From: Mytilus edulis
Lineage: Eukaryota
NCBI RefSeq assembly: GCF_963676685.1
Contig: NC_092354.1
Span: forward strand, 47,864,001-47,928,000
DNA length: 64,000 nt
Direction of reading: 5' to 3'
The translations under genes and the position numbers were made by a program. The notes under the pieces were generated by a model that ran no database searches, was not told where the DNA came from, and saw nothing but the letters and a program-made list of their open reading frames with translations. Of the stretch, positions 12,935 to 28,677 are shown piece after piece; the stretch's first letter is position 1; every line of letters starts with the position of its first letter.

Positions 12935-13160
12935 ATGATTCTGATGAACAGATATCTCCTCGTTATCATATTGTCGACTTATGCTCTTAGTGAAACAGTA
13001 TTACCAGGGGAGGTAACTGTTGCTGCCTTATTCCAAATACAGAATGCTGTTAATAATAAATGTGATGGAATTTCTCCACTCTCTGTGAAAAGTCTTGAAG
13101 CTGTCAAATGGACTTTTAGGAATTTAAATGAAAACAACTATATTCCTGGAGTTTCTATTG
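12935..13160 (+). CDS. Coding exon 1: signal peptide and start of VFT1
   Basis: Acceptor ttttacag ends 12933, ATG at 12935. MILMNRYLLVIILSTYALS is a hydrophobic leader, followed by PGEVTVAALF...SLEAVKW...YIPGVSIG, matching the class C pattern GD...LF...EAM...LLPNITLG. Donor G|gtaata, phase 1. Confidence 0.88.
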
Positions 13161-13788
13161 GTAATAACACAAATATGATAAGGCTAAAACATATAATATG
13201 AGTGATTACTATTACATCTGCGAAAAAAATGGAGTAGGTAAGAGGGGATTGTTTTTTTTTTATTTTACCATTTTATTTCACATTGAGTCTATGCATATGG
13301 GATGGATATATTGACTTTAACAGTGCTTATTGAAAAATGGCAAAAAAAACCCCTTCAGGGTACTAGGCTATTTATGAGAGGAAATACAATAGGTAGGGTA
13401 AAGTAATACAAGACTAACAAAGACCAGAGGCTCCTGACTTGGGACAGGCGCAAAAATGCGGCGGGGTTAATTATGTAAATGAGATCTCAACCGTTCCGCT
13501 ATACCTCTAACCAATGTAGAAAAGTAAACGCATAACAATAAGCATATTAATTTAGTTCAAGAGAAGTTCGAGTCTGATGTGCTGTGTTTCTGTTGTTCGT
13601 GTATGTTTTGTCTGTTTGTCTTTTTTCATTTTAAGTCATGGTGTTGTCAGTTTGTTTTTGATCTATGAGTTTGACTGTCTCTCTGGTATCTTTTGCCCCT
13701 CTTTTAGAGTGAAGGTGTGTTTTCACTTAAACTTTCGCACGTCTGGTGGTAGGTTTTCGGTAAACTTCACCAAAAAACTCCTATTAAT

Positions 13789-13899
13789 AGCTTTGAATCT
13801 ATTCAAAGCTTTACTTCTATCTATAGCTTTACTACTATTTATATAGCATTATTACTATTAAACACTTTACTTCTATGTATAGCTTTACTGCTATTTAAG
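13789..13899 (+). repeat. ~18-bp degenerate tandem repeat (~6 units) ending at the exon-2 acceptor
   Basis: agctttacttctatctat-like units at 13789, 13807, 13825, 13845, 13862, 13881. Confidence 0.75.
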
Positions 13900-14019
13900 G
13901 TCTAGAGGCTTACCCAACATGTGAGATGGTTGCAGAAGCCAGTGACAGGGCTGTTCATTTAATTTACAAAATCCGACAAGACAAACAAGACTCCTCCTTC
14001 ACAGATCCACCACTTGTAG
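13900..14019 (+). CDS. Coding exon 2 (absent from ORF track): GLEAYPTCEMVAEASDRAVHLIYKIRQDKQDSSFTDPPLV
   Basis: ttaag acceptor and G|gtaagt donor, 120 nt, phase 1-1. It supplies the G..xDTC-equivalent segment needed between exons 1 and 3. Confidence 0.85.
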
Positions 14020-15180
14020 GTAAGTAGTTTTTTACGGTAGGTTTGAGTAGAACGTAATTAAGCAGTTTATATTGACTGATGCTGAAAAGTTCCTCGCGTT
14101 ATATTTAACGATCCTAGTTTCGTTTCTTTTCAAGTAAATATCAGTGTCATCCTTCTAAAAATTTCGTAGTTAAACTTAACTAGACAGTTATCATAAAAAA
14201 GGATTCGCTGAATCTCTATTCTTGAAAATATATAGGGACCACTTGCTCATGCACATGACATATGTAAACACAAATCATTTGCCGTAAGTTTGTATGCTAT
14301 TCCGGAAACATAATCTGTTTCCTGTTACTAGTTGCGCTTTCCTTGTACTATTCCCAACCTTTAAACAAACCAGTATGAACATACGATAAATCGGAGCGAC
14401 GAGAACTCGTTTTGTCCTTAAAGAAATGACAACGATGCCTTCAAGTGAGTGACTACGTCAGTCATATTAAGAGACGATAACTGTGTATGATAAATATAAT
14501 ATTAGTTACATAGTGTATTAGTGATGATTAAATTCCATATATTGGATGAGAGTTTACTTTCACCCCATATGGCATTTACTAACCCCGTATATATCATATG
14601 AGGTCACTAGCACACGAACTTAACTTACCGGCTATCTTTATTTGTTTAATTTAGAACAGAGATGTCTCATTTGCAATCATACCACTTCCACTAGTCTGCA
14701 CAAAAAATCAATAACAATTTAAACAGATTAACTTTTAATACATTTAAATAACCAAATAGTGCCAAAGTCGTAAATCTACTACTAACCGTGTATTGAAATA
14801 AGCCCAACCTCCCTACTAACTTAATATGGAATATACACGGTCTCCGCGTGGATTCTTTTAACCAGTCATATTCCTGGAAATGTAGAGGAGGTAAAATGAT
14901 ATCAGTCAATCTATAGATATAACGACCGAGGGGCCTCCTACATACAATAGCTGATAAATACCGCAGACAACATGACCCGTTTAGAGAGAACAATGATCGC
15001 CAATAGTGACTACATGTCCGTAAGGCAATAATCAAAAGATCTGAAAATAAACTAATCTGAACTAATTAAAACTTGGATATCATCAATCTTATTAACGATA
15101 AAACCATAAACCCGCTGCAAATCAATGACAAACACTAACTTAATTCGTATTTACTTTGGAGAGGTCCAATATTGTCATAA

Positions 15181-16255
15181 AATGGTATGGTCAGTTATTA
15201 GTTATGGTGCAGGTATTTGGGGAACCAAAGACTTTTCCTGCATAAATGCAGTCCAAAAACAGGGCCATGAGATTTTTCATGGGTGTTGGCAAATACACAC
15301 CAAATGATGCCATAGCTGGTGATATGGGCTGGAAACCTCCATGCGTTAAACAATGATCACGTGTCTTGAGACATTGGGCTAGGTGTTCCATAATGGACCC
15401 ACACAGGATAAATTTTAAGATTTTTAAGTGGTCTATACGAAAGTGTAATACTAGAATTAAAAACTGGAGTTTCAGAGTTATAGAAATGTTAAAAATTGTA
15501 AAATTATGAGCAATATTGTAATTTTGAATTAAATGTATTGAACAAAAATTGTATTAAACAAATTGAGGAAGATGTATTTGATAATTTTAAATCAAACATG
15601 TGTACAAGAGTTGCTGCATATGCAGAGGAAAGTAAATTGAGGACTTACCAATAGTTTTAAAATAACTATTGTACTGAAAACTATGTGCAACATATTATGC
15701 CATTAAAAACAGAAGTTCATTCGCTTAATTTAGATGTGGGGTAGCTCCACTTAAAATAGAGACTGGAAGATATGAAAGGAAAGAAGTCCATGAGAGAACA
15801 TGTTTTAACTGTAGCTCTATTGTTGAAGATGAAATGCACATCATTTTTAAATGCCCATTGTATGTGGATCTAAGACAAGTCATGATACATGAAGCTTTTC
15901 ATTTTAATAAACGTTTTAACCTATTATCAGATAATAAAAAAAAAAATAAATTATTGAGTAACGACAATGTTGCTGCTATAGTTTTAATTATATTAAGAAT
16001 AATATTTAATTAAGAGGAAATAGTATTTTATATCACTAGTTCTTAAAGAAACAAATGTTTTACAATCATTTAGTAAATATATATTGTGAATTTTAATTAT
16101 AAATGTTTATATGTTTATAATATATCTTAAACGTCTCATAAATCTTTTTAAGATTGGTGTATGCAATGCAAATGTTTTAATGTTTTAAACCTATGCATGT
16201 GAATCTCATTTTATGTTTGTATGCGGTAAGACTATAATAACATATTGAATCTGAC
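15181..16255 (+). mobile_element. 5'-truncated, degenerate non-LTR retrotransposon (LINE) ORF2 C-terminus and 3'UTR in intron 2
   Basis: Across shifts and stops: ISYGAGIWG...FFMGVGKYTPNDAIAGDMGW...SKLRTY...FRCGVAPLKIETGRY...RTCFNC...EDEMHIIFKCPLY, a CCHC zinc knuckle typical of LINE ORF2 ends. Clade not determined. Confidence 0.85.
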
Positions 16256-16657
16256 TCATAAAGACTGGAACAGGATTAAAATTGATTGCGAGTGCACAGT
16301 TCTTCGCTAACCTTGATTAGCATAAAATTTCAAAGAAAAAATTGTAAAAAATCAACTTGAAAGCAATTGACTCATCACATCAAAACACACACTAAAAAAA
16401 ACTTACAAAAAGACAAAAGACACATACAAAGTACCGATACAAGGTACTTTTTTTTTAAAATCCAGTCCTATGCTTGTTACACTCAAATCGTACATTTGTT
16501 TAGTCGATTAGTAGTGTTTGTTAGCTGTACTTTTTTTTTGCAATATTGTTTTTTTTTGCAATTTTTTTTTTTTTTAAATTTTAGTTTTCTTTTAAAATTT
16601 AAAAATTTTTAGTTCTGTAAAATATATATCTTCTTAAATTATTGATATTACATTCAG

Positions 16658-16836
16658 CTCTGATAGGTCCTGGTTATAGTAGCGAAGTCCAGAAAACGTC
16701 GTACTTTTTAAGTTCCGAAAGAGCAGACGATAGATTATTACAAATTGGATTCTCCTCGACTGCTGCGTCACTAAGCAACACCAACATTTACAGCAATTTC
16801 TTCAGAGTTGTTGCAAGTGATGCCGTACAAATTGAG
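16658..16836 (+). CDS. Coding exon 3: VFT1 lobe 1 ligand-binding loops
   Basis: ttcag acceptor; ALIGPGYSSEV...QIGFSSTAASLSNTNIYSNFFRVVASDAVQIE; donor GAG|gtaaat. Confidence 0.92.
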
Positions 16837-17866
16837 GTAAATCTTTAATTCAGGGTATATAGTAATGTAAAATTACGGAACATCTATACTACTGAAGGAA
16901 TAGGAAGGTTTCCGTGAGCCGCATCTACTTTGAAACCCAAATAAAGTAGGAAATATATGGAATATATGACGTATAAATGTAGTGTTTGTACTTCCTAAAT
17001 TTGAATTTAAAATAGTCTTTTCCCCACGGAAAAGGCCAATTTTTGAAAAAAAAAATAACCCTATAATCCTTGTCTTATACGCTTTCGTACGCGTGCATGC
17101 TCAGTCCACGTACTGCCCTCCAAATTTAAAGACTCGTTGTTTCAACACTTGTCCAATTGTACCGCGATTATGCGGACATCTTCTAGTTTATCTTATTTGT
17201 CCAAAGGACTATAATCTTGTTATTGACTTTTCGTTCCGGAGTTTATTATTTTTCAACAGGTTGCCTACATTGTGATAAAACATGCTGGTACTCGGTTAAG
17301 TAAGAGCAATCGAATGAAAAATTAGCAAGCGGTTTTCAACAAAAGGTTAAGGTCAATGATCAGAAAGTTCTAATGATTAGAAATAGAACTGGACAAAACT
17401 GTACACTTTCCGTAAACATACGACAATATATTTTGCGAAAATGTTTGTAATAACTATGAGTTATAAAACTAACAAACTAGCTATACATATGAATTTGTTC
17501 AATAACTTTCCTGGTTATTCAGCGATCGATTCACAGGAATACTTAGCCGTAATTTGTCATTACAGCAAAGAAAAGTACAATAAAGATATTATTTTAGAAA
17601 GAGAAAAGAAAATAAGAATTATCAAGCTTACAATCGGTGTTAAAATAAAGAATTGGATAAACATAGATTGATTACAGAAATGAACGATAAGTTTACAGTT
17701 TACAATTAAATAGAACATACCTCCAGCCAGAGAAATACACAGATTGTACTTGTCTAGATAGAGAAATAAACAGCGAGTTGATGGTAGTGGTAAAGATAGG
17801 GAAATATACAGCGATTCGAAGGTACTTGTCTACTTGTCATAAACAGCGATTTAATTATACTATATA

Positions 17867-18036
17867 CAGTGAAACCTGATTAAACCGAACCCTGAATAAA
17901 CCGGAAACCTGTCTAATCCAAACTTGTTCTGAAGACCAATCATATCACATTTTGTGAACCTGATGAAACCGAATACCTGCCAAAACCGAACAAAATATTA
18001 AGTCCCGAAAGGGTTCGGTTTAGTTAGGTTTCACTG
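17867..18036. mobile_element. Tc1/mariner-pogo-like MITE
   Basis: TIR cagtgaaacct..ttaaaccgaaccct / agggttcggttta...aggtttcactg, flanked by TA on both sides. Confidence 0.85.
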
Positions 18037-18065
18037 TATTTTGTTTATATTTCATGTTTTATTAG

Positions 18066-18995
18066 GTTATGATTTCTTTGATGACAGAGCTAAAGTGGAA
18101 CTATATTGCTATTATATACGATGATGATATTTACAGAGAAGAAGGCAAAGAGGCATTGATGACACGAGTGGCTAAAAGCTCGATATGTGTTGCCACTTCG
18201 TTTGTTCTTCCTATTGGTGCGGTCAGCTTAATACAGGTCAGAGACATTCTTCAGAAGATTATTACAAACGGAGAGAGTCCAATAAGTGGAGTTGTTGTGT
18301 TAACCAGCGGTGCACATGCAAATGCCATAGTTACAGCTGCATCCGCTTTAAAAGATACATTATCGGACCCTATTTCTTTTATATTTTCCGAAGCCATAGG
18401 ACTTTCCGATAGTTACTTTTCTAGTAATACAGGTACTGTATTTAAAGCATCAAAAGGTGCATACGTTGTTTCTCCACCGCAGATTCGTATACATGAATTT
18501 GAAGATTACTGGTTTAATACCTTTCGGAATGCTTCGAGAGTTGTCGAAGAAACTAAAACTAATACTTGGTTAGAGAAAGTCTATAAAGAATATTCGAGTT
18601 GTTCATCTTCAATATCAATGTGTTCAGAACTTAATTCGGAACAAATAGAAAAAGCTTCCCAAATGTCCTCCTGGACAAGCTATGCAATCAAAGCCGCTTA
18701 TGTCACAGCAAAGGTTTTAAAACAAGTTCACGATCGCTTGTGTTCAGGACAACAAGGAATGTGCAGTAACATGAAAAGCCAATTATACAACAATAAGGGA
18801 TCTCTTATAGAAGAAATGAATAGTTTGTCAATTAATTTTAACACAGATTTTACTAATGTTCCAGCAGCATTAACTAATATTTCTCTTTATTTTAATGATA
18901 CAAGTGATGCTTAGTTTACTGCAGGATTTCCTGATTACCAAGTTTATCAGTATAGAACATGTATGTCGGACCCGTCTACATTCTGTTTAGAGAAG
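18066..18995 (+). CDS. Coding exon 4: VFT1 lobe 2, with premature TAG at 18912-18914
   Basis: ttattag|VMISLMTELKWNYIAIIYDDDIY...SICVA...FIFSEAIG...FEDYW. The frame continues past the TAG as FTAGFPDYQVYQYRTCMSDPSTFCLEK to AAG|gtaaga; 930 nt. Confidence 0.9.
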
Positions 18996-19000
18996 GTAAG

Positions 19001-19203
19001 AAATAAACTCATCATAGATACCAAAATTATGTATTTGCGCCAGACGCGCGTTTCGTATACGAAAGGCTCACCAATGACGCTCGCATGACAAACATAATAC
19101 TAAAAAGACCAAATAAAGTACGAAGTTGAAGAGCATTGAGGACCATATATTCCTAAAATATTTGCCAAATACAGCTAAGGTATTATATTCCTGAGGTAGA
19201 AAA
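19001..19203 (+). mobile_element. Interspersed repeat (aaataaactcatcatagatacc family) starting 5 nt after exon 4
   Basis: Close match to 60183-60378; partial copies near 940-1012(-), 8700-8860, 31820-32060 and 55617-55698(-). Confidence 0.8.
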
Positions 19204-19426
19204 GATGGAAGCGACATCGAATGATAATACATGCAGAGTTTTGAAAAAGGTTTACTATGATAATAGGACAAGTCGTGACGAGGATGAGTTTCTATACAAA
19301 CAAATGTCTAACTTGTCTATGCCTAGCACGTTTCTATCAGACTTCACTCTAGTTTGACGCATTTTGTATATTTTCAGTTGTGCTGGTTATTTTATAACTA
19401 GTGCATAGTCCGATGATATCGATTAG

Positions 19427-21006
19427 GATTGCCTGGTATTCATTTTGACATCGTACGCAATGACATGTTTAAGAATGGCCTTATACTCCTTTTGACATAG
19501 TACGGTGACATGTTTTGTGATTGCCTTATACTCCTTTTGAGATAGTACGGTGACATGCTTTATGACTGCCTGATATTCCGTCTGACATCGTACGCGGTGA
19601 CATGTTTAAGAATGGCCTTATACTCCTTTTGACATAGTACGATGACATGCTTTATGACTGCCTGATATTCCGTCTTACATCGTACGCGGTGACATGTTTA
19701 AGAATGGCCTTATACTCCTTTTGACATAGTACGGTGACATGCTTTATGACTGCCTGATATTCCGTCTGACATCGTACGCGGTGACATGTTTAAGAATGGC
19801 CTTATACTCCTTTTGACATAGTACGGTGACATGCTTTATGACTGCCGGATATTCCGTCTGACATCGAACGCGGTGACATGTTTTAGAATGGCCTTATACT
19901 CCTTTTGACATAGTACGGTGACATGCTTTATGACTGCCGGATATTCCGTCTGAAATCGTACACGGTGACATGTTTTAGAATTGCCTAATATTCCTTTTGA
20001 CATAGTACGGTGACATGCTTTATGACTGCCGGATATTCCGTCTGACATCGTACGCGGTGACATGTTTTAGAATTGCCTAATATTCCTTTTGACATAGTAC
20101 GGTGACATGCTTTATGACTGCCGGATATTCCGTCTGACATCGTACGCGGTGACATGTTTTAAAAATGCCTAATATTCCTTTTGACATAGTACGGTGACAT
20201 GTGTTTGATTGGCTGATATTTCTTTTGACAAAGTACAGTGACATGTTTCATGATTGCCTGATATTCCTTTAGACATATAACAGGGACATGTTTTATAATT
20301 GCCTGATAATCCTGTTGACATAGTACGGTGACATGTTTTATGATTGCCTGATAATTCTTTTCACATTGTACGGTGACATGTTTTATGATTGCCTGATATT
20401 CCTTTTGACATAGTACGGTGATATATTTTATAATTACTTGATAATACTTTTTAACAAAGTACGGTGACATGTTTTAGGATTGCCTAATATTCATTTTGAC
20501 ATAGTACGGTGGCATGTTTTCGGATTTATTATATTTCTTTTGACATAGTACGGTGACATTGTGACATTCTTTATGATTACCTGATAGTTCTTTTTGACAT
20601 AGTACGGTGAAATGTTTTATGATTGCCTAATATTCCCTTTGACATATTACGGTGACATGGCTTATGATTGCCTGATAATTCCTTTTGATATAGTACGGTG
20701 AAATGTTTTACATGTATGATTGCCTTATATTATTTTTGACATAGCACGCTGATATGGTTTATGGTGGCCTGATAATTTTTTTGACATAGTACGGTGACAT
20801 GTTTTATGATTGCCTGATAATCCTGTTGACATAGTACGGTGACATGTTTTATGATTGCCTGATAATTCTTTTGACATAGTACGGTGACATGTTTTTTGAT
20901 TGCCTGATAATTCTTTTGACATAGTACGGTGACATGTTTTTTGATTGCCTGATATTCCTTTTTACAAAGTACGGTGACATGTTTTTTGATTGCCTGATAT
21001 TTTTTT
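19427..21006. repeat. 45-bp minisatellite (~35 units) in intron 4, with a 92-bp dimeric higher-order repeat in its 5' half
   Basis: Unit gacatagtacggtgacatgttttatgattgcctgatattcctttt; the 47-bp variant cgtacgcgg recurs every 92 bp (e.g. 19681, 19773). Confidence 0.95.
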
Positions 21007-21679
21007 CGATATCAGTTATGTTTTGTTGATATTCGTTTTCAGTTTTAAGCTCTATGTACAATATGAAAATGGATATGTTAAATTTGAAACAATATGTATT
21101 TTATTTCTCATTCTTACAAATTAGTAATGTAATTACGCTCAATAAAGATGTATCCATGTTTCTGGGCAGATAGCTAACCAGATGACGAAGCAATATGAAT
21201 GGCGACCCTTTTTAAAATTAAAGCGCGTCTGATTGTACTGCATATCAATGCCAAAGAACTCTAGGGTCGAGATGGGAATAACACGTTCTATAATCTAGAT
21301 TGGGTAAACACGTATTTCATGAATGAAAGACAAAAAATTACACAAAATGTTGTCGAAAAAAAATGAGAGAAATAATAGAGCGCTAAAATATAGATAAAAT
21401 ACAATAATTGGCATGATATATAGACTATACTTGGCAAACAAAATAGATGATAGAATCCAACAATGAACCCACCAAATACAGACCATCAATTATAGGGTTC
21501 AACAAAACATTTAACTGGTCTATTTCACTCTTTTGAAATAAAAAAGGTATTGGAAAAATAGAATACAAATCAATGTGTTACCACACGTATTTACTACAAA
21601 TTTATTAGTATCCGGATAGTTTTCCTTCTGGAGTATATTTTATCGTGTATATTCAATGGTATGTTTTAACTCTCTATAG

Positions 21680-23167
21680 ATCGGGACTTTTAACAACACT
21701 GAACTTATGATGGATAAATCAAAGATTAGAGAGTATGATAACACCGGAAATGACCTGCTATGGCCAAATATTAACTATGCGCAGTGTAAAGAGTCCAGAC
21801 GTTGTAGCTCGTGCATCTTACAGGAAGTCTATGATAAAGTCTACTTCCGGAATGGCGATCTTATTGTTGTCGGTATAGTTCCAGTTTATGATGGTGGCAC
21901 TGACGACCCATTAGCATGTGGTGTGATAAGGACGTCGTTAGGGAATTAACTAGTTGAGGCCATGGAATACGCTGTTACCCTGATAAACAATAAAACAGCA
22001 CCGTACGGACAACTGTTTCCGGGTAAATCTATTGGACTTTTAATTCTAAATAGTTGTGATCAGCCTTTACTCGCTCAATATAAATTGCTGTCAATTTTGA
22101 ACAACGGACTTTTATTGGATAATAATACAAGTGTCAATGTAAAAGGCAAACTGATTGGAATAGCTGGTCCTTATTCAAGCAGTATAAGTGTCGCGGTTTC
22201 AGATGTGTTATCAAAGTTTGGGTACGTACAAGTAGCGTATGCGTCGACTGCTGTCGATTTAAGTGACCGAAATAAATACCCTTACTTCACCCGAGTCTCC
22301 ACACCAGATAATAGACAAACTCAGGCTATGATGCGTATCATCAAACATTCAAAATACTACTCTGAATATATTCAATTCGTCTACAGTAAAGGCACATATG
22401 GTGAAGCCGGTCGTGACGCGCTAAGACAGGAAGCAATAAAAGCGGAAGTATGTATTGCACAGGAAATAGAAGTTGATGACGGAGAAAATTTCAATCTTAT
22501 TAAAGAGAAACTGCGGAAATATCCATTTGCAAAAATTGTCATTTTGTTTCTTCGTTCCCATCAAGTTGAACCAATAACATCAGCACTTAACGATATTGAA
22601 TATGGCGAATTCTTGTTTATAGGATCCGAAGCATGGGGGTTTAGGCCGAATGAGTTCTCAAATAAACCAAAACTGGTAGGTAGTATCATTTTGGCATTGC
22701 AATTACCTACCAATAACAACTTTACCAACTATTTAAGAAATAAAGACGTTTTAACTGACAAAAGTAATCCCTGGTTACTAGAATATATCGCTGCTAAATA
22801 CAACTGTCATGTAGATACTAGTTTCGACAAGACATTTACTTCATCTTGTGGGTCAAATTTAAAATTAGCAAGTTCTTCAACGTACGAACAGGAGATATGG
22901 ATATGTGCTTAACGCAATGCTGGCACTACTTTCCGGAACTAGCGAAGCGTTTCAAGAGTTATGCGGGTCCGCTTCTGCAACCTTGTGTGACCAATACTTA
23001 CTTAACCCAAAAATGTTAGGAACAAAGTTATCAAACAGAAGCTTGATGTCGACGGAAGTGGAAATCTTGTCAGTTTGTTTGACGAAAACGGTGATGGAAA
23101 CGTAGGTTACACAATCTACAACTTACAACGCAATAAGAATGACGCAAATAAAATAGAATACCAAAAA
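21680..23167 (+). CDS. Coding exon 5: end of module 1, Cys linker and nearly all of VFT2; one stop and two frameshifts
   Basis: ctatag|IGTFNN...CKESRRCSSC...GDLIVVGIVPVY...GN*LVEAMEYAV...GPYSSSIS...QVAYASTAVDLSDRNKYPYFTRVSTPD...FIGSEAWG...NPWL. After a shift: YVLNAMLALL...LCDQY. After a second shift: FDENGDGNVGYTIYNLQ...EYQK|gtaagt. Confidence 0.9.
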
Positions 23168-23816
23168 GTAAGTTAATTATGTTAACTGAAGCACACAAAG
23201 TAGTTTATCAAAAGGTTATTTATAAATCATGTCTATGGCGCAAATAAAGTAGACTATCGAAAGATGAGTTTATCATGTTAAAAGCAGTAGTGTATGCTGC
23301 ATAGTCTTGACTGCGGAGTATTAACATCGCAGTTTAAGGATGTTCGGTTTTCTTGTTTTCTTAACTGATTATAAGATTGTCCGGCTCCTCTGGTTTTATC
23401 CATTTGGTGCCATTTAAATTTTGAACCCTAACCCTTACTTTTCATTTTATCGGTTAATAAAATATAGTTTGAAAAGTGATTTTTTAAATCTTTCAAAATT
23501 TTGTATGATAGATAGATCAGAATGTCCTCTTTTGTTCTGTTATTTCAAGATCTAATATTGTTGAAATTAATGGGAGCTTACACCGTAATTTGGTAATTTG
23601 ATGATAAACCAAAAGTTATTTAAAGATTTCCCGAATTACCAGTCACGCAAATTCAAGAGACTACCATTTCTTACTTGAGTGTAACTTTGAAATGGTTAGG
23701 TCTGCTGGTTTTTCGGCCATGTTTTGGTGAACTCCAAATTGCATGATTCTTACAAAGTGTGGTACTTCTCACTATGATAGGTTTTACCATGTATACATAT
23801 ATAAAATCTTTTACAG

Positions 23817-23977
23817 GTAGGGACTTATCCTTTAGATGGTTCAACTTTTGACCTGGATGTGAACAGAATAGTAGAACCAGATGGAATAAATCTGCCTTCT
23901 GTCTGTCCAAACGACAGGGCGTGTAGTATGTGTAAAACAACTGGAATTGATTCGACGCCATCCCCTGCTCTTGCCAG
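23817..23977 (+). CDS. Coding exon 6: end of module 2, Cx5Cx2C motif and stalk
   Basis: ttttacag|VGTYPLDGSTFDLDVNRIVEPDGINLPSVCPNDRACSMCKTTGIDSTPSPALA; donor CAG|gtaaat, phase 2. Confidence 0.85.
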
Positions 23978-24086
23978 GTAAATATGCAATAGATATGCAG
24001 CCTGTCTGTCTAAACGACAAGGCGTGTAGTATATGTTAAACATTTGAATTTTTTTCGACGTCATCCCCTGCTCTTACCAGGTAAGT
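23899..24086 (+). repeat. 103-bp-period tandem duplication of the 3' end of exon 6 including its splice donor
   Basis: ctgtctgtc...tcccctgctcttgccag|gtaaat (donor 23978) is repeated as ctgtctgtc...tcccctgctcttaccag|gtaagt (donor 24081). Confidence 0.9.
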
Positions 24087-24163
24087 ACGATCAGCACGTT
24101 TCTTACCGCAGGTTTTGGTGAGGTTCGTGTTGCAAAGTTTTTATTTTGCTATGTTGTTGTTTG

Positions 24164-24627
24164 TTTTTATGCCCCATTTATGGGCATTATGTTTTCTGGT
24201 TTGTGCGTCCGTTCGTTCGTTCGTCCGGCCGTTCGTCTGTCCCGCTTCAGGTTAAAGTTTTTGGTCGAGGTAGTTTAAAAAAAAGTTTAAGTCCAATCAA
24301 CTTGAAACTTAGTAAACATGTTCCCTATGATATGATCTTTAGAATTTTATACCAAATTAAATTTTGATCCCTATTTCACGGTCCACTGAACATAGAAAAT
24401 GATATTGCAAAGTTCAGGTTAAAGTTTTGGTTAAAGTTTTTGGTCAATGTAGTTTTTGATGAAGTTGAAATCTAATCAACTTGAAACTTAGTAAACATGT
24501 TCCCTATGATTTGACCTTTTTAATTTTAATGCCAAATTAGAGATTTTATCCAATTTTCACGGTCCACTGAACATAGAAAATGATAGTGCGGATGGGGCAT
24601 CCGTTTACTGTGGACACATTCTTGTTT
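24164..24627 (+). mobile_element. Helentron-associated (HINE/DINE-1-like) non-autonomous element with two core repeats
   Basis: T-rich insertion site, short inverted repeat atgccc...gggcat, (gtcc/gttc)n microsatellite, duplicated core caggttaaagttttt...ccactgaacatagaaaatgata, end ggacacattcttgtt. Confidence 0.75.
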
Positions 24628-25277
24628 TTACTGTTGTTTATCTGGTGGTCTTTTTCTTTTTAAGCCATGGCTTTGTCAGTTTATTTGCAACTTGTTAGTT
24701 TGAATGTCACTACGGCATTTTTCTTTTCTTTATTTTTTGTCCATTATCCTTTTTTAAATTCATTATAATACCATTCAAACCAATTCATATCGTCATACTA
24801 TAAGTCACATGATAATGTACTATCGCCTTCTAGTATCAAACATGAAACCTTTTTACTTATAACATCAATATTATTATGTTTATGTTTGATTATCTAATAC
24901 CATTCTGTCTAAGGTTAGAGTTTCTTTTTGACATTTTCTTTATTTATATTTTATGTAAATTATGTCACAGATCAAACTTACTCGTTCAGTGTATGCTTAC
25001 TTGTTTTTGTTTTGATGTCATCCAATTGATATTTTAGGATACATCTATATATATACGCTATATTTATGCTCTGAATATGATTTTTAGTTTATAGTCACAT
25101 GGTTATTCCGGATAGCAGTGTTGTTCGTACCAATATCGCGATCAACAATTTGCTTTGAAAAAAAATAAAATTTGATAACAATTTAACATAACTATGCATT
25201 ATAATAAAGATAATTCTGACAAGCGTCACCGATTTGTTTGATATATCTAGAGATAGATAGTCATAAACAGACATATA

Positions 25278-25669
25278 AAGGGTGTGTGCTCCTCTATTTT
25301 TAAAATTTGTGCCAGATTTTTGAAATCCTCTGGTTTTATCCATGTATTGACATTAACAAATTTTGCCCACTTATCCCTACTTTTCTTTTTTTAATTTTAT
25401 TACATAAAGTGTAAACAGACTTATTTCAAAGTATTATAAAATCCTTGTTATTTTTTCATAGATTTTGAGACAAAAAGGTGCCAATGTTAAATATATGAAA
25501 AATCTAGAGAGAATTATTTCCCGCCAAATTTTAATGGCTTATATCTCGAAAACAAGCACAACGACCTTCCATTTTTTTCTGCTTTTTTAGTTTCTTTATT
25601 TATATACTATTTCTTCATAACAGCCATTTAAAAAGCTTGTTATTTTTAAAAAAAAAGTAGCGAACATCC
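25278..25669. mobile_element. Degenerate TTAA-type DNA transposon remnant; related fragment from 23337
   Basis: Right end agcgaacatcc|ttaa; shares tcctctggttttatccat with 23337-23450. Confidence 0.5.
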
Positions 25670-25673
25670 TTAA

Positions 25674-25940
25674 TTCAGTTCAGTGTGTTCAGTAGTTGTC
25701 GTTTGTTGATGTGGTTCATAAGTGTTTCTTTTTTCTCGTTTTTTATATAGATTAGACTGTTGGTTATCCTGTTGGAATGGTTTAACACTAATCATTTTGG
25801 GACCCTTTATAGCTTGCTGTTCTGTGAGAGCAATGGCTCTGTGTTGATGACCGTACTTTGACATATAATGTTTATTTTTACAAATTGTGACTTAGATTGA
25901 GAGATGTCTGATTGGCAATCATACCCCATCTTCTCATGTC
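25674..25940 (+). mobile_element. SINE-like interspersed repeat; copies near 37120-37375(-), 54480-54610(-), 59282-59535(+)
   Basis: Shared ttgtcgtttgttgatgtggttcataagtg...ccgtactttgac...ttgtgactt...ttggca.tcatacc. Confidence 0.7.
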
Positions 25941-25941
25941 T

Positions 25942-27700
25942 ATATTTAAATATGTTTACTATATACTTTACAGTGATGACGATGGTGGTACTGTAAAATC
26001 ATATTTAATTATTTTTACTCCATGTTTTACAGTGATGAAGATGGCGGTACTGTCAAAGCATATTTAATTATTTTACTCCATGTTTTACCATGATGAAGAT
26101 GGCGGTACTGTCAAAGCATATTTAATTATTTTACTCCATGTTTTACAGTGATGAAGATGGCGGTACTGTCAAAGCATATTTAATTATTTTACTCCATGTT
26201 TTACAGTGATGAAGATGGCGGTACTGTAAAAGCATATTTAATTATTTTACTCCATGTTTTACCATGATGAAGATGGCGGTACTGTCAAAGCATATTTAAT
26301 TATTTTACTCCATGTTTTACAGTGATGAAGATGGCGGTACTGTCAAAGCATATTTAATTATTTTTACTCCATGTTTTACAGTGATGAAGATGGCGGTACT
26401 GTCAAAGCATATTTAATTATTTTACTCCATGTTTTACCATGATGAAGATGGCGGTACTGTCAAAGCATATTAAATTATTTTACTCAATGTTTTACAGTGA
26501 TGAAGATGGCGGTACTGTCAAAGCATATTTAATTATTTTACTCCATGTTTTACAGTGATGAAGATGGCGGTAATGTAAAAGCATATTTAATTATTTTTAC
26601 TCAATGTTTTACCATGATGAAGATGGCGGTACTGATATGGTATGTTTAATTATTTTTACTCCATGTTTTACAGTGATAGGATGGCGGTACTGTAAAAGCA
26701 TATTTAATTATTTTTACTCCATCTTTTACAGTGATGAAGATGGCGGTACTGCTTTAGCATATTTTATTATTTTTACTCAATGTTTTACCATGATGAAGAT
26801 GGCGGTACTGTTATAGCATATTTAATTATTTTTACTCAATGTTTTACCATGATGAAGATGGCGGTACTGTAATAGTATATTTAATTATTTTTACTCCATG
26901 TTTTACAGTCATAGGATGGCGGTACTGTTACAGCATATTTAATTATTTTTACTCCATGTTTTACAATGATGAGGATGGCGGTACTGCTTTAGCATATTTT
27001 ATTATTTTGACTCCAGGATTGACAGTGATGAAGATGGCGGTACTGTTATAGCATATTTAATTATTTTTACTCAATGTTTTACAATGATGAAGAGGGCGGT
27101 ACTGTTATAGTATATTTAATTATTTTTTCTCCATGTTTTACAGTGATAGGATGGCGGTACTGTTACAGCATATTTAATTATTTTTACTCCATGTTTTACA
27201 GTGATGAAGATGGCGGTACTGTTATAGCATATTTAATTATTTTTACTCCATGTTTTAGAGTGATGAAGATTGTGGTACTGTTATAGCATATTTAATTATT
27301 TTTACTCCATGTTTTACAGTGATGAAGATGGCGGTACTGTTTAAGCATATTTAATTATTTCTACTCCATGTTTTACAGTGATTAAGATGGCGGTACTGTT
27401 ACAGCATATTTAATTATTTTTACTCAATTTTTACCATGATGAAGATGGCTGTACTGTTATGGCATATTTAATTATTTTTACTCCATGTTTTACAGTGATG
27501 AAGATGGCGGTACTGTTTAAGCATATTTAATTATTTCTACTCCATGTTTTACAGTGATTAAGATGGCGGTACTGTTACAGCATATTTAATTATTTTTACT
27601 CATGTTTTACCATGATGAAGATGGCTGTACTGTTATGGCATATTTATTTATTTTGACTCTATGTTTTACAGTGATGAAGATGACGGTACTGTTATAGCAT
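25942..27700 (+). repeat. 58-59-bp minisatellite, 30 units, built from the exon-7 splice acceptor plus the first ~29 nt of exon 7
   Basis: Unit tttaattatttttactccatgttttacag|tgatgaagatggcggtactgttatagcata; the last unit runs directly into the TM exon. Confidence 0.95.
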
Positions 27701-27781
27701 TAGGAGTTATTGTTGGAATCTTAGTGTTGATTCTAGTTGTTGCTATGGTTGCCCTGTTACTGTGTTATCGTAAAATGAAAG
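27672..27781 (+). CDS. Coding exon 7: transmembrane helix
   Basis: ttttacag|(S)DEDDGTVIALGVIVGILVLILVVAMVALLLCYRKMK(G)|gtaatg. A ~25-aa hydrophobic run is followed by a basic stop-transfer segment; phases 2 and 1 fit both neighbours. Confidence 0.88.
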
Positions 27782-28132
27782 GTAATGTAATCTAAGCCAC
27801 TGCTTAAAAAGTGTTTGCGAATTTTTTGGTTTGTTTTCAATTTTTAGCTCTAAGATTTATTTGCCATGTTTATGTATTTTGAAAATAAATTAGTATAACC
27901 CATAAATTTGATGCTTATTTAGTAAGGTAAACTTACTTTATGTAGCAACCTAAAATGTTTTTCGTTTGTTTGTGTGCAGGGGTGTGGCTATGTTTTGGGT
28001 TATTCTTGTCGCTTTTATGGGGTGTTGATTTTTTTTGTTTTATTCAGTATATGGTTTTATTGTTGCTTTTAGAAAGAAACTGATTTTATATTCAATTTAT
28101 TTTCTACCTTACTTATTCCCATTTTATTATAG

Positions 28133-28677
28133 GCGAAACGGTAAAAGAAGACTATAATTACCTCAATGTAATTGATGATCCGAACTATAGACACGTGGCA
28201 AATGTGACCAATCATAATCGTGAAGGTCGTAGTAACGGGATATATTCTGTAGAGGACACCACAACTGATACTAGGGGTCCTCCACCACGAAATACCGAGT
28301 CCTATCTAAGTCCGAGTAGTATAACAAGAGATACCTATCTCATGCCTAAAGACGAACAATCTAACAAAAATGATACAGATCCTAAAAATGTAGAGCTTGC
28401 ATATGCCAGTAACTCTGAACCAGGGAGAGCAGACATGTCTTATATGAGTGAAACTGAATTGAAAAAGCTGGAAGGATCGAAAAGTAGTAAAGAGGTGACA
28501 CGTGAAATGCAAACAACTGGTATACCAGCCTTGCCAACTTCCAATGTCCATCATGTTACTCCTATACCACACAAAGTAACACAACAAACATCAAAAGTAC
28601 AGAACTCACCACCGCTAGCTCCATCGCATACACGACCTCAGCAGATAGCAGTTGTGTCAGGTATTCCAAAGACATAA
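28133..28677 (+). CDS. Coding exon 8: disordered cytoplasmic tail with tyrosine motifs, natural stop TAA
   Basis: Long pyrimidine tract then tatag|(G)ETVKEDYNYLNVIDDPNYRHV..., in frame with ORF 28195-28677; S/T/P-rich with 8 Tyr. Confidence 0.85.

What the first reader, a model, noticed from the sequence alone, without database searches (positions are those of the whole stretch)
12935..28677. Tandem Venus-flytrap, single-pass, non-catalytic receptor
Seen: signal peptide, VFT1, Cx5Cx2C, VFT2, Cx5Cx2C, stalk, one TM, a ~185-aa Tyr-rich tail, then stop. Established: class C GPCRs couple one VFT to a 7TM, natriuretic peptide receptors A/B to a guanylyl cyclase, Venus kinase receptors to a tyrosine kinase, and NPR-C has one VFT and a short tail. 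I know no characterised family with two mGluR-like VFTs on a single-pass adaptor-type tail. Inference: a small-molecule sensor signalling through recruited tyrosine kinases/SH2 proteins, or a co-receptor for class C GPCRs.
Basis: partly seen in the sequence, partly recalled or inferred. Interest (0 to 1): 0.85.

Follow-up and report, generated by a model that had tools for sequence, protein, structure and literature searches.

The report
Tandem Venus-flytrap single-pass receptor gene
A mussel gene encodes two glutamate-receptor-like ligand-binding domains in tandem on a single membrane anchor with a short signalling-type tail; the family is conserved in molluscs and brachiopods but unstudied, and this assembly's copy is broken.

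Summary
Window 12935-28677 (+) is an 8-coding-exon gene. It encodes a signal peptide, VFT1, a Cx5Cx2C motif, VFT2, a second Cx5Cx2C, one TM helix and a ~180-aa tail, then a stop.

In this assembly the copy is disabled by a TAG at 18912, a TAA at 21947, a 5-nt deletion near 22903 and a 1-nt deletion near 23011. An inverted-duplicate paralogue 12 kb beyond the window end is intact. The three lesions I could test are not fixed: two are absent from every public run that covers them, and the 1-nt deletion is mixed in one. These include exon-only contigs spliced e5 to e6 exactly as modelled.

The architecture is real and conserved. At least 39 protein clusters (50% identity) carry 2x ANF_receptor, one TM and no 7TM, kinase or cyclase. 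They come from bivalves, gastropods and Lingula, and are labelled "uncharacterized" or mislabelled "mGluR".

Both VFTs keep the amino-acid backbone-binding residues but lack glutamate's two basic contacts. Tails share an enriched D-x-Y-[IL]-x-P motif (28 observed, 2.7 expected). VFT1 and VFT2 group with VFT1 and VFT2-4 of five-VFT class C GPCRs, which also occur in this genome.

I found no paper on such animal receptors and no earlier scan note on other DNA. Function is inferred, not shown.

The parts
12935..13160 (+). Coding exon 1: ATG, signal peptide, start of VFT1. It ends in phase 1. An acceptor AG sits just before the ATG, which suggests an upstream 5'UTR exon.
   Evidence: 96% aa identity to P0170 residues 1-76.
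13900..14019 (+). Coding exon 2: VFT1 lobe-1 segment, phase 1 to phase 1.
   Evidence: P0170 residues 76-115 and P0165 residues 66-104 align here.
16658..16836 (+). Coding exon 3: VFT1 segment carrying the GPG-x-SS and S-S-T ligand-backbone motifs.
   Evidence: Pfam ANF_receptor E 2e-4..
18066..18995 (+). Coding exon 4: rest of VFT1.
   Evidence: Pfam ANF_receptor E 2e-14. The neighbour's e4 matches mGluR6/7/8 structures at E about 4e-9.
18912..18914 (+). Lesion 1: in-frame TAG where the neighbour copy has CAG (Gln).
   Evidence: Not tested with reads.
21680..23167 (+). Coding exon 5: inter-VFT linker with Cx5Cx2C (21785-21814) and the whole of VFT2.
   Evidence: Pfam ANF_receptor E 2.5e-30. 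The neighbour's e5 matches mGluR7 VFT structures at E 1e-49.
21947..21949 (+). Lesion 2: in-frame TAA where the neighbour and all four public runs read GAA (Glu).
22899..22905 (+). Lesion 3: 5-nt deletion causing a frameshift. Runs X1 and X7 and the neighbour carry 5 extra bases here.
23008..23013 (+). Lesion 4: 1-nt deletion in an A-run that restores the frame. X2 and X7 carry the extra base; X1 is mixed.
23817..23977 (+). Coding exon 6: post-VFT2 stalk with the second Cx5Cx2C (23904-23933). It ends in phase 2.
   Evidence: Run X7 contig 30 joins 23167 to 23817 exactly.
23984..24084 (+). Partial tandem duplicate (103-bp period) of the 3' end of exon 6, including a donor site and an in-frame stop. 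It is present only in the window copy.
25942..27700 (+). Minisatellite of 59 bp x 30 in intron 6. Each unit copies the TM-exon acceptor and its first codons. It is absent from the neighbour copy.
27672..27781 (+). Coding exon 7: acidic juxtamembrane stretch, a single TM helix (about 27691-27765) and an R-K-M-K stop-transfer sequence.
   Evidence: P0170 residues 1038-1078 align here.
28133..28677 (+). Coding exon 8: cytoplasmic tail of about 180 aa with 8 Tyr. It holds Y-L-S-P (28303-28314) and Y-L-M-P (28336-28347), and the stop TAA at 28675-28677. It lacks a 99-nt in-frame segment that the neighbour has.

Best explanation
Shown:
- The locus is a gene of a Mytilus-like mussel genome for a type-I membrane protein of about 1250-1286 aa.
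- Its layout is signal peptide, mGluR-type VFT1, Cx5Cx2C, mGluR-type VFT2, Cx5Cx2C, a short stalk, one TM helix and a tail with no recognisable domain.
- It belongs to a conserved but uncharacterised family of molluscs and brachiopods.
- The two VFTs arose from one ancient duplication, shared with multi-VFT (up to five) class C GPCRs.
- In this assembly the window copy carries four ORF-breaking lesions. Its inverted twin, and the same locus in other animals, are intact and transcribed.

Inferred:
- Both VFTs keep the five residues that hold the alpha-amino-acid backbone in mGluR/CaSR-type pockets.
- The two basic residues that hold glutamate's side chain are replaced by aliphatic or aromatic residues. 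Each VFT therefore probably binds a non-acidic amino acid or amino-acid-like small molecule.
- Clamshell closure or re-orientation would be passed through the short cysteine-bearing stalk and the single TM to the tail.
- The tail has no enzyme, but carries a family-wide acidic-x-Y-[IL]-x-P motif that most likely acts as a phosphotyrosine docking site for SH2 proteins after phosphorylation by a recruited cytoplasmic kinase.
For: Gene model and domains.

Intact twin:
- The neighbour has one open frame of 1286 codons across 8 exons with conserved splice sites.
- dN/dS between the two copies is 0.24 with dS 0.136, and introns are only 80-87% identical. Both copies were therefore under constraint for most of their history.

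Reads:
- All four runs read G, not T, at 21947.
- X1 and X7 carry the 5 bases missing near 22903. X2 and X7 carry the base missing at 23011.
- X7 and X16 cover exons only.
- X7 contig 30 joins 23167 to 23817.
- Window-type and neighbour-type contigs are both present at 22447-22591.

Public orthologue: P0170 (M. galloprovincialis, 1283 aa, 2x ANF_receptor only) is collinear exon for exon and ends at the same stop.

Family:
- 39 representatives have 2 VFTs and 1 TM.
- Pfam on 11 of them finds only ANF_receptor and Peripla_BP_6 above threshold.
- P0165 is 1222 aa on a 4066-nt contig, so it is intron-free, and it is collinear with e1-e6.

Motifs and pocket:
- Cx5Cx2C is present in 28 of 39 linkers and 30 of 39 stalks.
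- The pocket signature is kept in 23-31 of 31 sequences per position, and R78/K409 are lost. Residue numbering is established mGluR1 knowledge; the alignment to mGluR7 is.
- Tail motif: 28 Y[ILVM]xP observed against 2.7 +/- 1.7 in shuffles (maximum 11 in 2000). 24 of 35 tails have at least one, against 2.6 expected.
- Seven tail Tyr are invariant among four Mytilus sequences.

Trees: VFT1 and VFT2 are each one group (93/97 by FastTree; 92/84 by IQ-TREE). VFT1 joins the first VFT of the five-VFT GPCRs (96; 99).
Against: - No ligand, phosphorylation or partner has been observed; the mechanism rests on conserved residues and a short linear motif.
- Y-[IL]-x-P could be a trafficking or other signal.
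- About a third of the tails (11 of 35) lack the motif, and some tails are only 13-20 aa long.
- The e6-e7-e8 splices are supported by the public annotation and by conservation, not directly by reads laid here.
- The VFT1-VFT2 contact test gave no verdict.
- The window copy itself cannot make the protein as assembled.
- A genome-wide check for kinase exons near the locus was not run. Only 7tm_3 and guanylate cyclase were checked.
Confidence: 0.55

Rival explanations
1. Non-signalling ligand sink, clearance or uptake receptor, working like NPR-C. The two VFTs capture a small molecule and the tail motif drives endocytosis or sorting rather than phosphotyrosine signalling.
For: There is no catalytic domain. 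Several family members have very short tails of 13-21 aa that still carry one Y-[IL/T]-x motif close to the membrane, as sorting signals often do.
Against: Pro at Y+3 is not the classical YxxPhi sorting signal (established knowledge). Acidic residues before the Tyr, and long tails with several conserved Tyr, fit kinase substrates better.
Confidence: 0.2
2. Accessory sensor subunit. The single-pass protein pairs through its VFTs with a class C GPCR, for instance the related multi-VFT GPCRs, and signals through that partner's 7TM.
For: Its VFT1 and VFT2 are the closest relatives of VFT1 and VFT2-4 of five-VFT class C GPCRs, which are present in the same genome. Class C receptors work as VFT dimers (established knowledge).
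Against: There is no linkage to a 7TM gene: no 7tm_3 match on this contig. The conserved tail motif would be unexplained. No interaction test was possible.
Confidence: 0.15
3. The four ORF breaks in the window copy are assembly errors, and the animal has an intact gene here.
For: None of the three tested lesions is fixed in other runs. The 1-nt deletion lies in an A-run, a typical long-read error site.
Against: Two of the lesions are base substitutions and one is a 5-nt deletion outside any homopolymer. In e5 the same haplotype carries at least 17 further private substitutions at sites where all runs and the paralogue agree. It also has a 103-bp exon-end duplication, a 1.8-kb minisatellite and a 99-nt tail deletion that the neighbour lacks. 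X1 holds some contigs without the extra base at 23011.
Confidence: 0.25
4. A truncated or mis-modelled ordinary mGluR whose 7TM exons lie further away.
For: Automatic names in databases such as 'metabotropic glutamate receptor 6/7/8', 'GRM4' and 'GRM7-like'.
Against: There is an in-exon stop after the tail in both copies and in P0170. No ORF of 130 aa or more exists elsewhere in the window. There is no 7tm_3 on the contig. 39 homologue clusters end after one TM, among them proteins on contigs barely longer than their ORFs.
Confidence: 0.03

Closest known systems
Metabotropic glutamate receptors (class C GPCRs)
   Same: Both VFTs are mGluR-type by sequence. VFT2 matches mGluR7 at E 1e-49 and the e4 part of VFT1 matches mGluR6/7/8 at E 4e-9. 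The Ser/Thr/Asp/Tyr/acidic backbone-binding signature is kept.
   Different: There are two VFTs in one chain. There is no NCD3G cysteine-rich domain, only a 3-Cys Cx5Cx2C remnant. There is no 7tm_3. The basic residues that bind glutamate's side chain are lost.
Multi-VFT class C GPCRs (for example the Tubulanus protein P0002 with 5x ANF_receptor + 7tm_3, and two such genes at C6:74.19-74.24 Mb of this genome); themselves uncharacterised
   Same: These are the closest relatives. VFT1 groups with their first VFT and VFT2 with their VFT2-4. The Pfam matches show the same split of VFT1 at ANF_receptor profile position about 109 in both genes.
   Different: They end in a 7TM domain and have 2-5 VFTs. 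The single-pass family has exactly two VFTs, one TM and a Tyr-motif tail.
Natriuretic peptide clearance receptor NPR-C
   Same: An ANF_receptor-fold ectodomain on a single TM with a short non-catalytic tail.
   Different: NPR-C has one VFT of the NPR type that binds peptides. Here there are two mGluR-type VFTs, and no NPR chain appears among the 60 PDB matches shown, of 84 at E<=1e-10.
Venus kinase receptors (VKR)
   Same: An invertebrate single-pass receptor with a class-C-like VFT that binds amino acids (PMC3703292, PMC4026697).
   Different: VKRs have one VFT and an intrinsic tyrosine-kinase domain. Here there is no kinase domain.
BvgS/EvgS bacterial sensor kinases
   Same: The only described receptors with tandem VFTs ahead of a single TM (PMC4352136, PMC5573083).
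   Different: They are bacterial, use a different periplasmic-binding-protein subfamily and have a histidine-kinase output. The resemblance is analogy, not homology at family level.

Membership tests
Class C GPCR (mGluR-like) | Venus-flytrap (ANF_receptor) ligand-binding domain | tested here: met
   Pfam hits. PDB matches to mGluRs.
Class C GPCR (mGluR-like) | Nine-cysteine NCD3G domain between the VFT and the membrane | tested here: not met
   No NCD3G hit in any exon or in P0170. Only Cx5Cx2C is present.
Class C GPCR (mGluR-like) | 7tm_3 heptahelical domain | tested here: not met
   There is one TM only. No 7tm_3 match anywhere on contig C11. No ORF of 130 aa or more elsewhere in the window.
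Venus kinase receptor | Intracellular tyrosine-kinase domain after the TM | tested here: not met
   The e8 tail and P0170 give no Pfam kinase hit.
Receptor guanylyl cyclase / NPR-A,B | Guanylate_cyc domain | tested here: not met
   No hit in the exons. The nearest listed Guanylate_cyc match on C11 is 36 Mb away (17 weaker matches were not listed).
NPR-C | A single NPR-type VFT and a ~37-aa tail | tested here: not met
   There are two VFTs, both mGluR-type. The tail is 180-215 aa.
Uncharacterised mollusc/brachiopod 2xVFT single-pass family (P0170, P0165, P0014, P0071 and others) | Two ANF_receptor domains in one chain | tested here: met
Uncharacterised mollusc/brachiopod 2xVFT single-pass family (P0170, P0165, P0014, P0071 and others) | Cx5Cx2C after each VFT | tested here: met
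   Window positions 21785-21814 and 23904-23933. 28 of 39 and 30 of 39 family members have it.
Uncharacterised mollusc/brachiopod 2xVFT single-pass family (P0170, P0165, P0014, P0071 and others) | One TM near residue 1000-1065, then a domain-free tail with Y-[IL]-x-P | tested here: met
   The window tail has Y-L-S-P and Y-L-M-P.
Uncharacterised mollusc/brachiopod 2xVFT single-pass family (P0170, P0165, P0014, P0071 and others) | Uninterrupted reading frame (a working member) | tested here: not met
   The window copy has 2 stops and 2 frameshifts. The neighbour copy is intact.

The most novel reading that the evidence does not exclude
The locus represents a previously undescribed receptor class of lophotrochozoans. 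These would be 'poly-VFT' receptors in which an ancient VFT1-VFT2 module is mounted either on a 7TM domain (with up to five VFTs) or on a single TM with a phosphotyrosine-docking tail. The single-pass form would be a kinase-less, immune-receptor-style chemosensor for aromatic or aliphatic amino-acid-like cues, for example the amino-acid-derived cues known to trigger bivalve larval settlement.
Probability: 0.25. Interest if true: 0.8.

Novelty: new variant of a known kind. Interest (0 to 1): 0.6.

Why it matters
VFT domains are known to be coupled to 7TM bundles, ion channels, guanylyl cyclases, tyrosine kinases or, in NPR-C, nothing. A conserved animal family with two amino-acid-type VFTs in tandem on a single-pass, enzyme-free, Tyr-motif tail would add a new output logic to this sensor fold.

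Together with the related five-VFT GPCRs, it shows that molluscs, brachiopods and nemerteans have built multi-VFT receptors that textbooks do not list. The family is easy to test: the ectodomains can be expressed, candidate ligands are cheap, and the tail motif is short.

It also corrects database names, since these proteins are not 'mGluR6/7/8' or 'GRM4'. The broken window copy next to an intact twin is a clear example of a null haplotype in a mussel genome.

Tried and rejected
- Complex prediction on VFT1 (P0170 residues 22-485) against VFT2 (530-985) scored 0.00, which is no verdict. It is not evidence either way.
- The protein-atlas search with P0170 returned only single-VFT clusters such as NPR-C and V2R, and gave no structure search. 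It was uninformative.
- The search for homologous proteins with P0165 gave only 4 hits because of its word filter, but these included the Mytilus orthologues.
- Four literature searches found nothing on animal tandem or multi-VFT receptors.
- The scan's own notes hold nothing similar on other DNA.
- I considered an alternative genetic code (TAA/TAG read as Gln) and rejected it. The frameshifts cannot be explained that way, the twin has Gln and Glu codons at those sites, and introns are of animal size.
- I considered a small intron bypassing the lesions and rejected it, because the homologous residues run straight through.
- I did not run a genome-wide kinase-domain search, because the family is too large for the candidate cap.
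Exons were searched one by one by reference, and the public protein P0170 stood in for the spliced product. The exons were joined only inside a local script, to check that the neighbour's frame stays open.


Full report
**What is in the window.**
- The window is G000:C11:47864001-47928000 of a 1.37-Gb, roughly 30% GC animal genome with 14 large contigs.
- Three-frame translation and inspection of every junction give an 8-coding-exon gene on the + strand. Its exons are e1 12935-13160, e2 13900-14019, e3 16658-16836, e4 18066-18995, e5 21680-23167, e6 23817-23977, e7 27672-27781 and e8 28133-28677.
- All introns are GT-AG and the phases match.
- Pfam finds ANF_receptor in e3 and e4 (E 2e-14) and in e5 (E 2.5e-30), and nothing else.
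- Read directly, the product has a hydrophobic signal peptide, VFT1 (e1-e4), a linker with Cx5Cx2C and VFT2 (both in e5), a 54-aa stalk with a second Cx5Cx2C (e6), one 25-residue TM helix followed by R-K-M-K (e7) and a ~180-aa tail with 8 Tyr (e8).

**The window copy is broken.**
- The frame is interrupted four times: TAG at 18912-18914, TAA at 21947-21949, a 5-nt deletion after about 22903 and a 1-nt deletion at about 23011.
- The stretch between the two deletions is clearly homologous to mGluR sequence in the shifted frame, so these are real breaks and not introns.

**An intact twin lies just outside the window.**
- A genome-wide ANF_receptor search showed a second pair of hits on the minus strand, 16-22 kb past the window end. 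I fetched that region.
- It is an inverted duplicate of window 10.4-53.6 kb. Exons are 92-95% identical and introns 80-87%.
- All eight exons and splice sites are conserved. The frame is open for 1286 codons, with Gln at the TAG site, Glu at the TAA site and no frameshift.
- dN/dS between the copies is 0.24 at dS 0.136. Both copies were therefore constrained for most of the time since duplication.
- Three structural changes occur only in the window copy: a 103-bp duplication of the e6 end, a 59-bp x 30 minisatellite of the e7 acceptor, and a 99-nt in-frame tail deletion.

**Reads.**
- No public run holds more than 54% of the 31-mers of e5. I laid two DNA-like runs and two RNA-like runs, all kept as contigs, on 21100-25900 at 96% likeness or better.
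- All four runs read G at 21947, giving Glu rather than a stop.
- X1 and X7 carry the five bases missing near 22903. X2 and X7 carry the base missing at 23011, and X1 is mixed there.
- X7 and X16 cover exons only, so they are RNA.
- X7 contig 30 runs 22772-23167 and then 23817-23977, which is exactly my e5/e6 junction, and continues for 186 nt beyond the laid stretch.
- Comparing each contig's differences with the window-versus-neighbour differences shows that most contigs are of the window type. For example, intronic contigs differ from the window at 6-7 sites where the neighbour differs at 36.
- Window-type and neighbour-type transcripts both occur at 22447-22591.
- In e5 the assembled haplotype has at least 17 private substitutions at sites where all runs and the paralogue agree.
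- My reading is that the locus is a live, transcribed gene in the population. The assembled haplotype is most likely a null allele (about 0.75) rather than an assembly error (about 0.25).
- The assembly holds no other copy of e5 beyond the window, the neighbour and a 66%-identical locus on C2.

**Is the architecture real and does it end there?**
- A full HMMER scan of 1.84 billion representatives with the neighbour's e5 found 2696 hits.
- I classified the best 150, plus cluster members, with a local VFT profile and hydropathy. This gave 39 proteins with two VFTs, exactly one TM at about residue 860-1065 and tails of 13-600 aa. It also gave 20 proteins with 2-5 VFTs followed by about 7 TM segments.
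- Pfam on eleven of the two-VFT proteins shows two ANF_receptor stretches and no 7tm_3, kinase, cyclase or NCD3G.
- Named members come from these taxa:
  - Bivalves: Solemya, Saccostrea, Pinctada, Potamilus, Pecten, Sinanodonta, Mactra, Mya, Mytilus.
  - Gastropods: Nucella, Bulinus, Patella, Batillaria, Physella, Haliotis, Babylonia, Littorina.
  - The brachiopod Lingula.
- All are called 'hypothetical' or 'uncharacterized', or are auto-named 'metabotropic glutamate receptor 6/7/8', 'GRM4' or 'GRM7-like'.
- P0170 (M. galloprovincialis, 1283 aa) is 95-100% identical to the neighbour's e1-e6 and 84-88% to e7-e8. It breaks at exactly my exon borders and ends at the same stop. This also identifies the genome as a Mytilus close to M. 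galloprovincialis.
- P0165 (1222 aa on a 4066-nt contig, hence intron-free) is collinear with e1-e6.
- In the genome, no 7tm_3 match lies on contig C11 at all. The only listed guanylate-cyclase match on C11 is 36 Mb away. The window has no other ORF of 130 aa or more.

**How it probably works (inferred).**
- VFT2 matches mGluR7/3/8 VFT structures at E about 1e-49, against 1e-20 for CaSR. The e4 part of VFT1 matches mGluR6/7/8 at E about 4e-9.
- I used the established mGluR1 pocket numbering: Ser165, Thr188, Asp208, Tyr236 and Asp318 for the amino-acid backbone, and Arg78 and Lys409 for glutamate's distal carboxylate.
- I read these columns in an alignment of 124 VFT domains:

| Position | VFT1 (31 members) | VFT2 (31 members) |
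|---|---|---|
| Ser165 | S/T 30 | S 28 |
| Thr188 | T 30 | T/S 27 |
| Asp208 | D 31 | D 23 |
| Tyr236 | Y 30 | Y 31 |
| Asp318 | E/D 29 | E/D 28 |

- Arg78 becomes mostly I/L/A in VFT2 and mostly N/T/E/A in VFT1. Lys409 becomes mostly aromatic (Y/F/W) in both VFTs. Single-VFT mGluR-like controls keep R in 6 of 8 and K in 7 of 8.
- Both VFTs thus look competent for an alpha-amino-acid-like ligand with a non-acidic side chain, and not for glutamate.
- The tails cannot be aligned, but they share a motif, [D/E]-[D/P]-Y-[I/L]-x-P. There are 28 occurrences of Y[ILVM]xP in 35 tails against 2.7 +/- 1.7 in shuffles (maximum 11 in 2000). 24 tails have at least one, against 2.6 expected.
- The window and neighbour tails each have two such motifs (Y-L-S-P and Y-L-M-P), and seven Tyr are invariant among four Mytilus sequences.
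- From memory, not tested: pY-[I/L]-x-P with upstream acidic residues resembles the PLC-gamma/Crk-type SH2 sites of ErbB receptors (D-E-Y-L-I-P-Q) and PDGFR (Y-I-I-P).
- The most likely mechanism is therefore ligand-driven VFT closure or re-orientation, then phosphorylation of the tail by a recruited cytoplasmic kinase, then SH2 docking.
- The rivals are a non-signalling sink or uptake receptor, and an accessory subunit for class C GPCRs.

**Origin.**
- In FastTree and IQ-TREE trees of VFT domains rooted on single-VFT mGluR-like receptors, all family VFT1s form one group (93; 92) and all VFT2s another (97; 84).
- VFT1 joins the first VFT of five-VFT GPCRs (96; 99). VFT2 joins their VFT2-4 (85).
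- The tandem module therefore predates the mollusc-brachiopod split and is shared with multi-VFT class C GPCRs.
- The Pfam matches show the same split of VFT1 at profile position about 109 in this gene and in those genes.
- Two five-VFT + 7TM genes lie at C6:74.186-74.202 and 74.222-74.236 Mb of this genome, collinear with the nemertean protein P0002.

**Comparison and novelty.**
- The protein works like a VFT receptor of the single-pass kind (NPR-C, VKR), but it fails the defining tests of each known family. It has no 7tm_3 or NCD3G (class C), no kinase (VKR), no cyclase (NPR-A/B), and it has two mGluR-type VFTs rather than one NPR-type VFT (NPR-C).
- Tandem VFTs are described only for bacterial BvgS/EvgS.
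- The sequences are already public as unnamed predictions. What is new is the recognition and characterisation of the family, not the sequence.
- I rate it a new variant of a known kind with interest 0.6. It is a real, conserved and testable receptor architecture with unexpected multi-VFT relatives. Function is inferred only, and the window's own copy is dead as assembled.

**Limits.**
- Only one read-laying run was available, and all runs were contigs.

Noticed in passing
L003:7475 down to L002:2341, minus strand (G000:C11:47,940,341-47,955,475; 12-28 kb past the window end): This is the intact inverted-duplicate paralogue of the window gene, 1286 codons in 8 exons. The two genes lie tail to tail in a large imperfect palindrome that reaches from window position ~10.4 kb to ~95 kb in extended coordinates.
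   Followed up: yes
L010-L015 (G000:C6:74,186,428-74,201,774 and 74,221,678-74,236,475, + strand): Two genes here are collinear with a nemertean protein that has 5x ANF_receptor + 7tm_3. They are class C GPCRs with five Venus-flytrap domains in tandem, and each is followed by a one-VFT + 7TM gene. I found no paper describing such receptors. They deserve a finding of their own.
   Followed up: partly
window 25942-27700: A minisatellite of 59 bp x 30 whose unit contains the acceptor and first codons of the TM exon. It is absent from the neighbour copy, whose intron 6 is 968 bp. Each unit is a potential cryptic acceptor.
   Followed up: partly
window 23984-24084: A 103-bp tandem duplicate of the 3' end of exon 6, including a stronger-looking donor (CAG|GTAAGT) and an in-frame stop. 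It is specific to the window copy.
   Followed up: partly
window 19423-21001 (intron 4): A 45/92-bp tandem array of about 34 units. The neighbour copy has the same array at the same intron position.
   Followed up: no
window 24159-24641 and 25286-25900 (intron 6): Summed contig depth reaches 10^4 to 10^6 in all four runs, RNA-like runs included. These are very high-copy repeats, probably transposable elements, embedded in the intron.
   Followed up: no
L005-L007 (G000:C2:42.81-42.83 Mb, minus strand) and L008-L009 (G000:C1:45.92-45.93 Mb, + strand): Two further, more divergent tandem-VFT loci. The C2 locus has Cx5Cx2C and a 578-aa open VFT2 exon. The C1 locus has a Cx3Cx2C linker and a long Ser/Pro-rich tail exon. 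The genome therefore holds at least four members of the family.
   Followed up: partly
window 28142-28168 (start of exon 8): The sequence E-D-Y-N-Y-L-N-V directly after the TM is invariant in four Mytilus sequences. From memory it resembles a hemITAM (acidic-Y-x-x-L) and a Grb2-type pY-x-N site. It is not conserved outside Mytilus.
   Followed up: no
window 28539/28540: The window copy lacks a 99-nt in-frame segment of the tail (33 aa, including one Tyr). The neighbour, M. galloprovincialis and M. coruscus all have it.
   Followed up: partly
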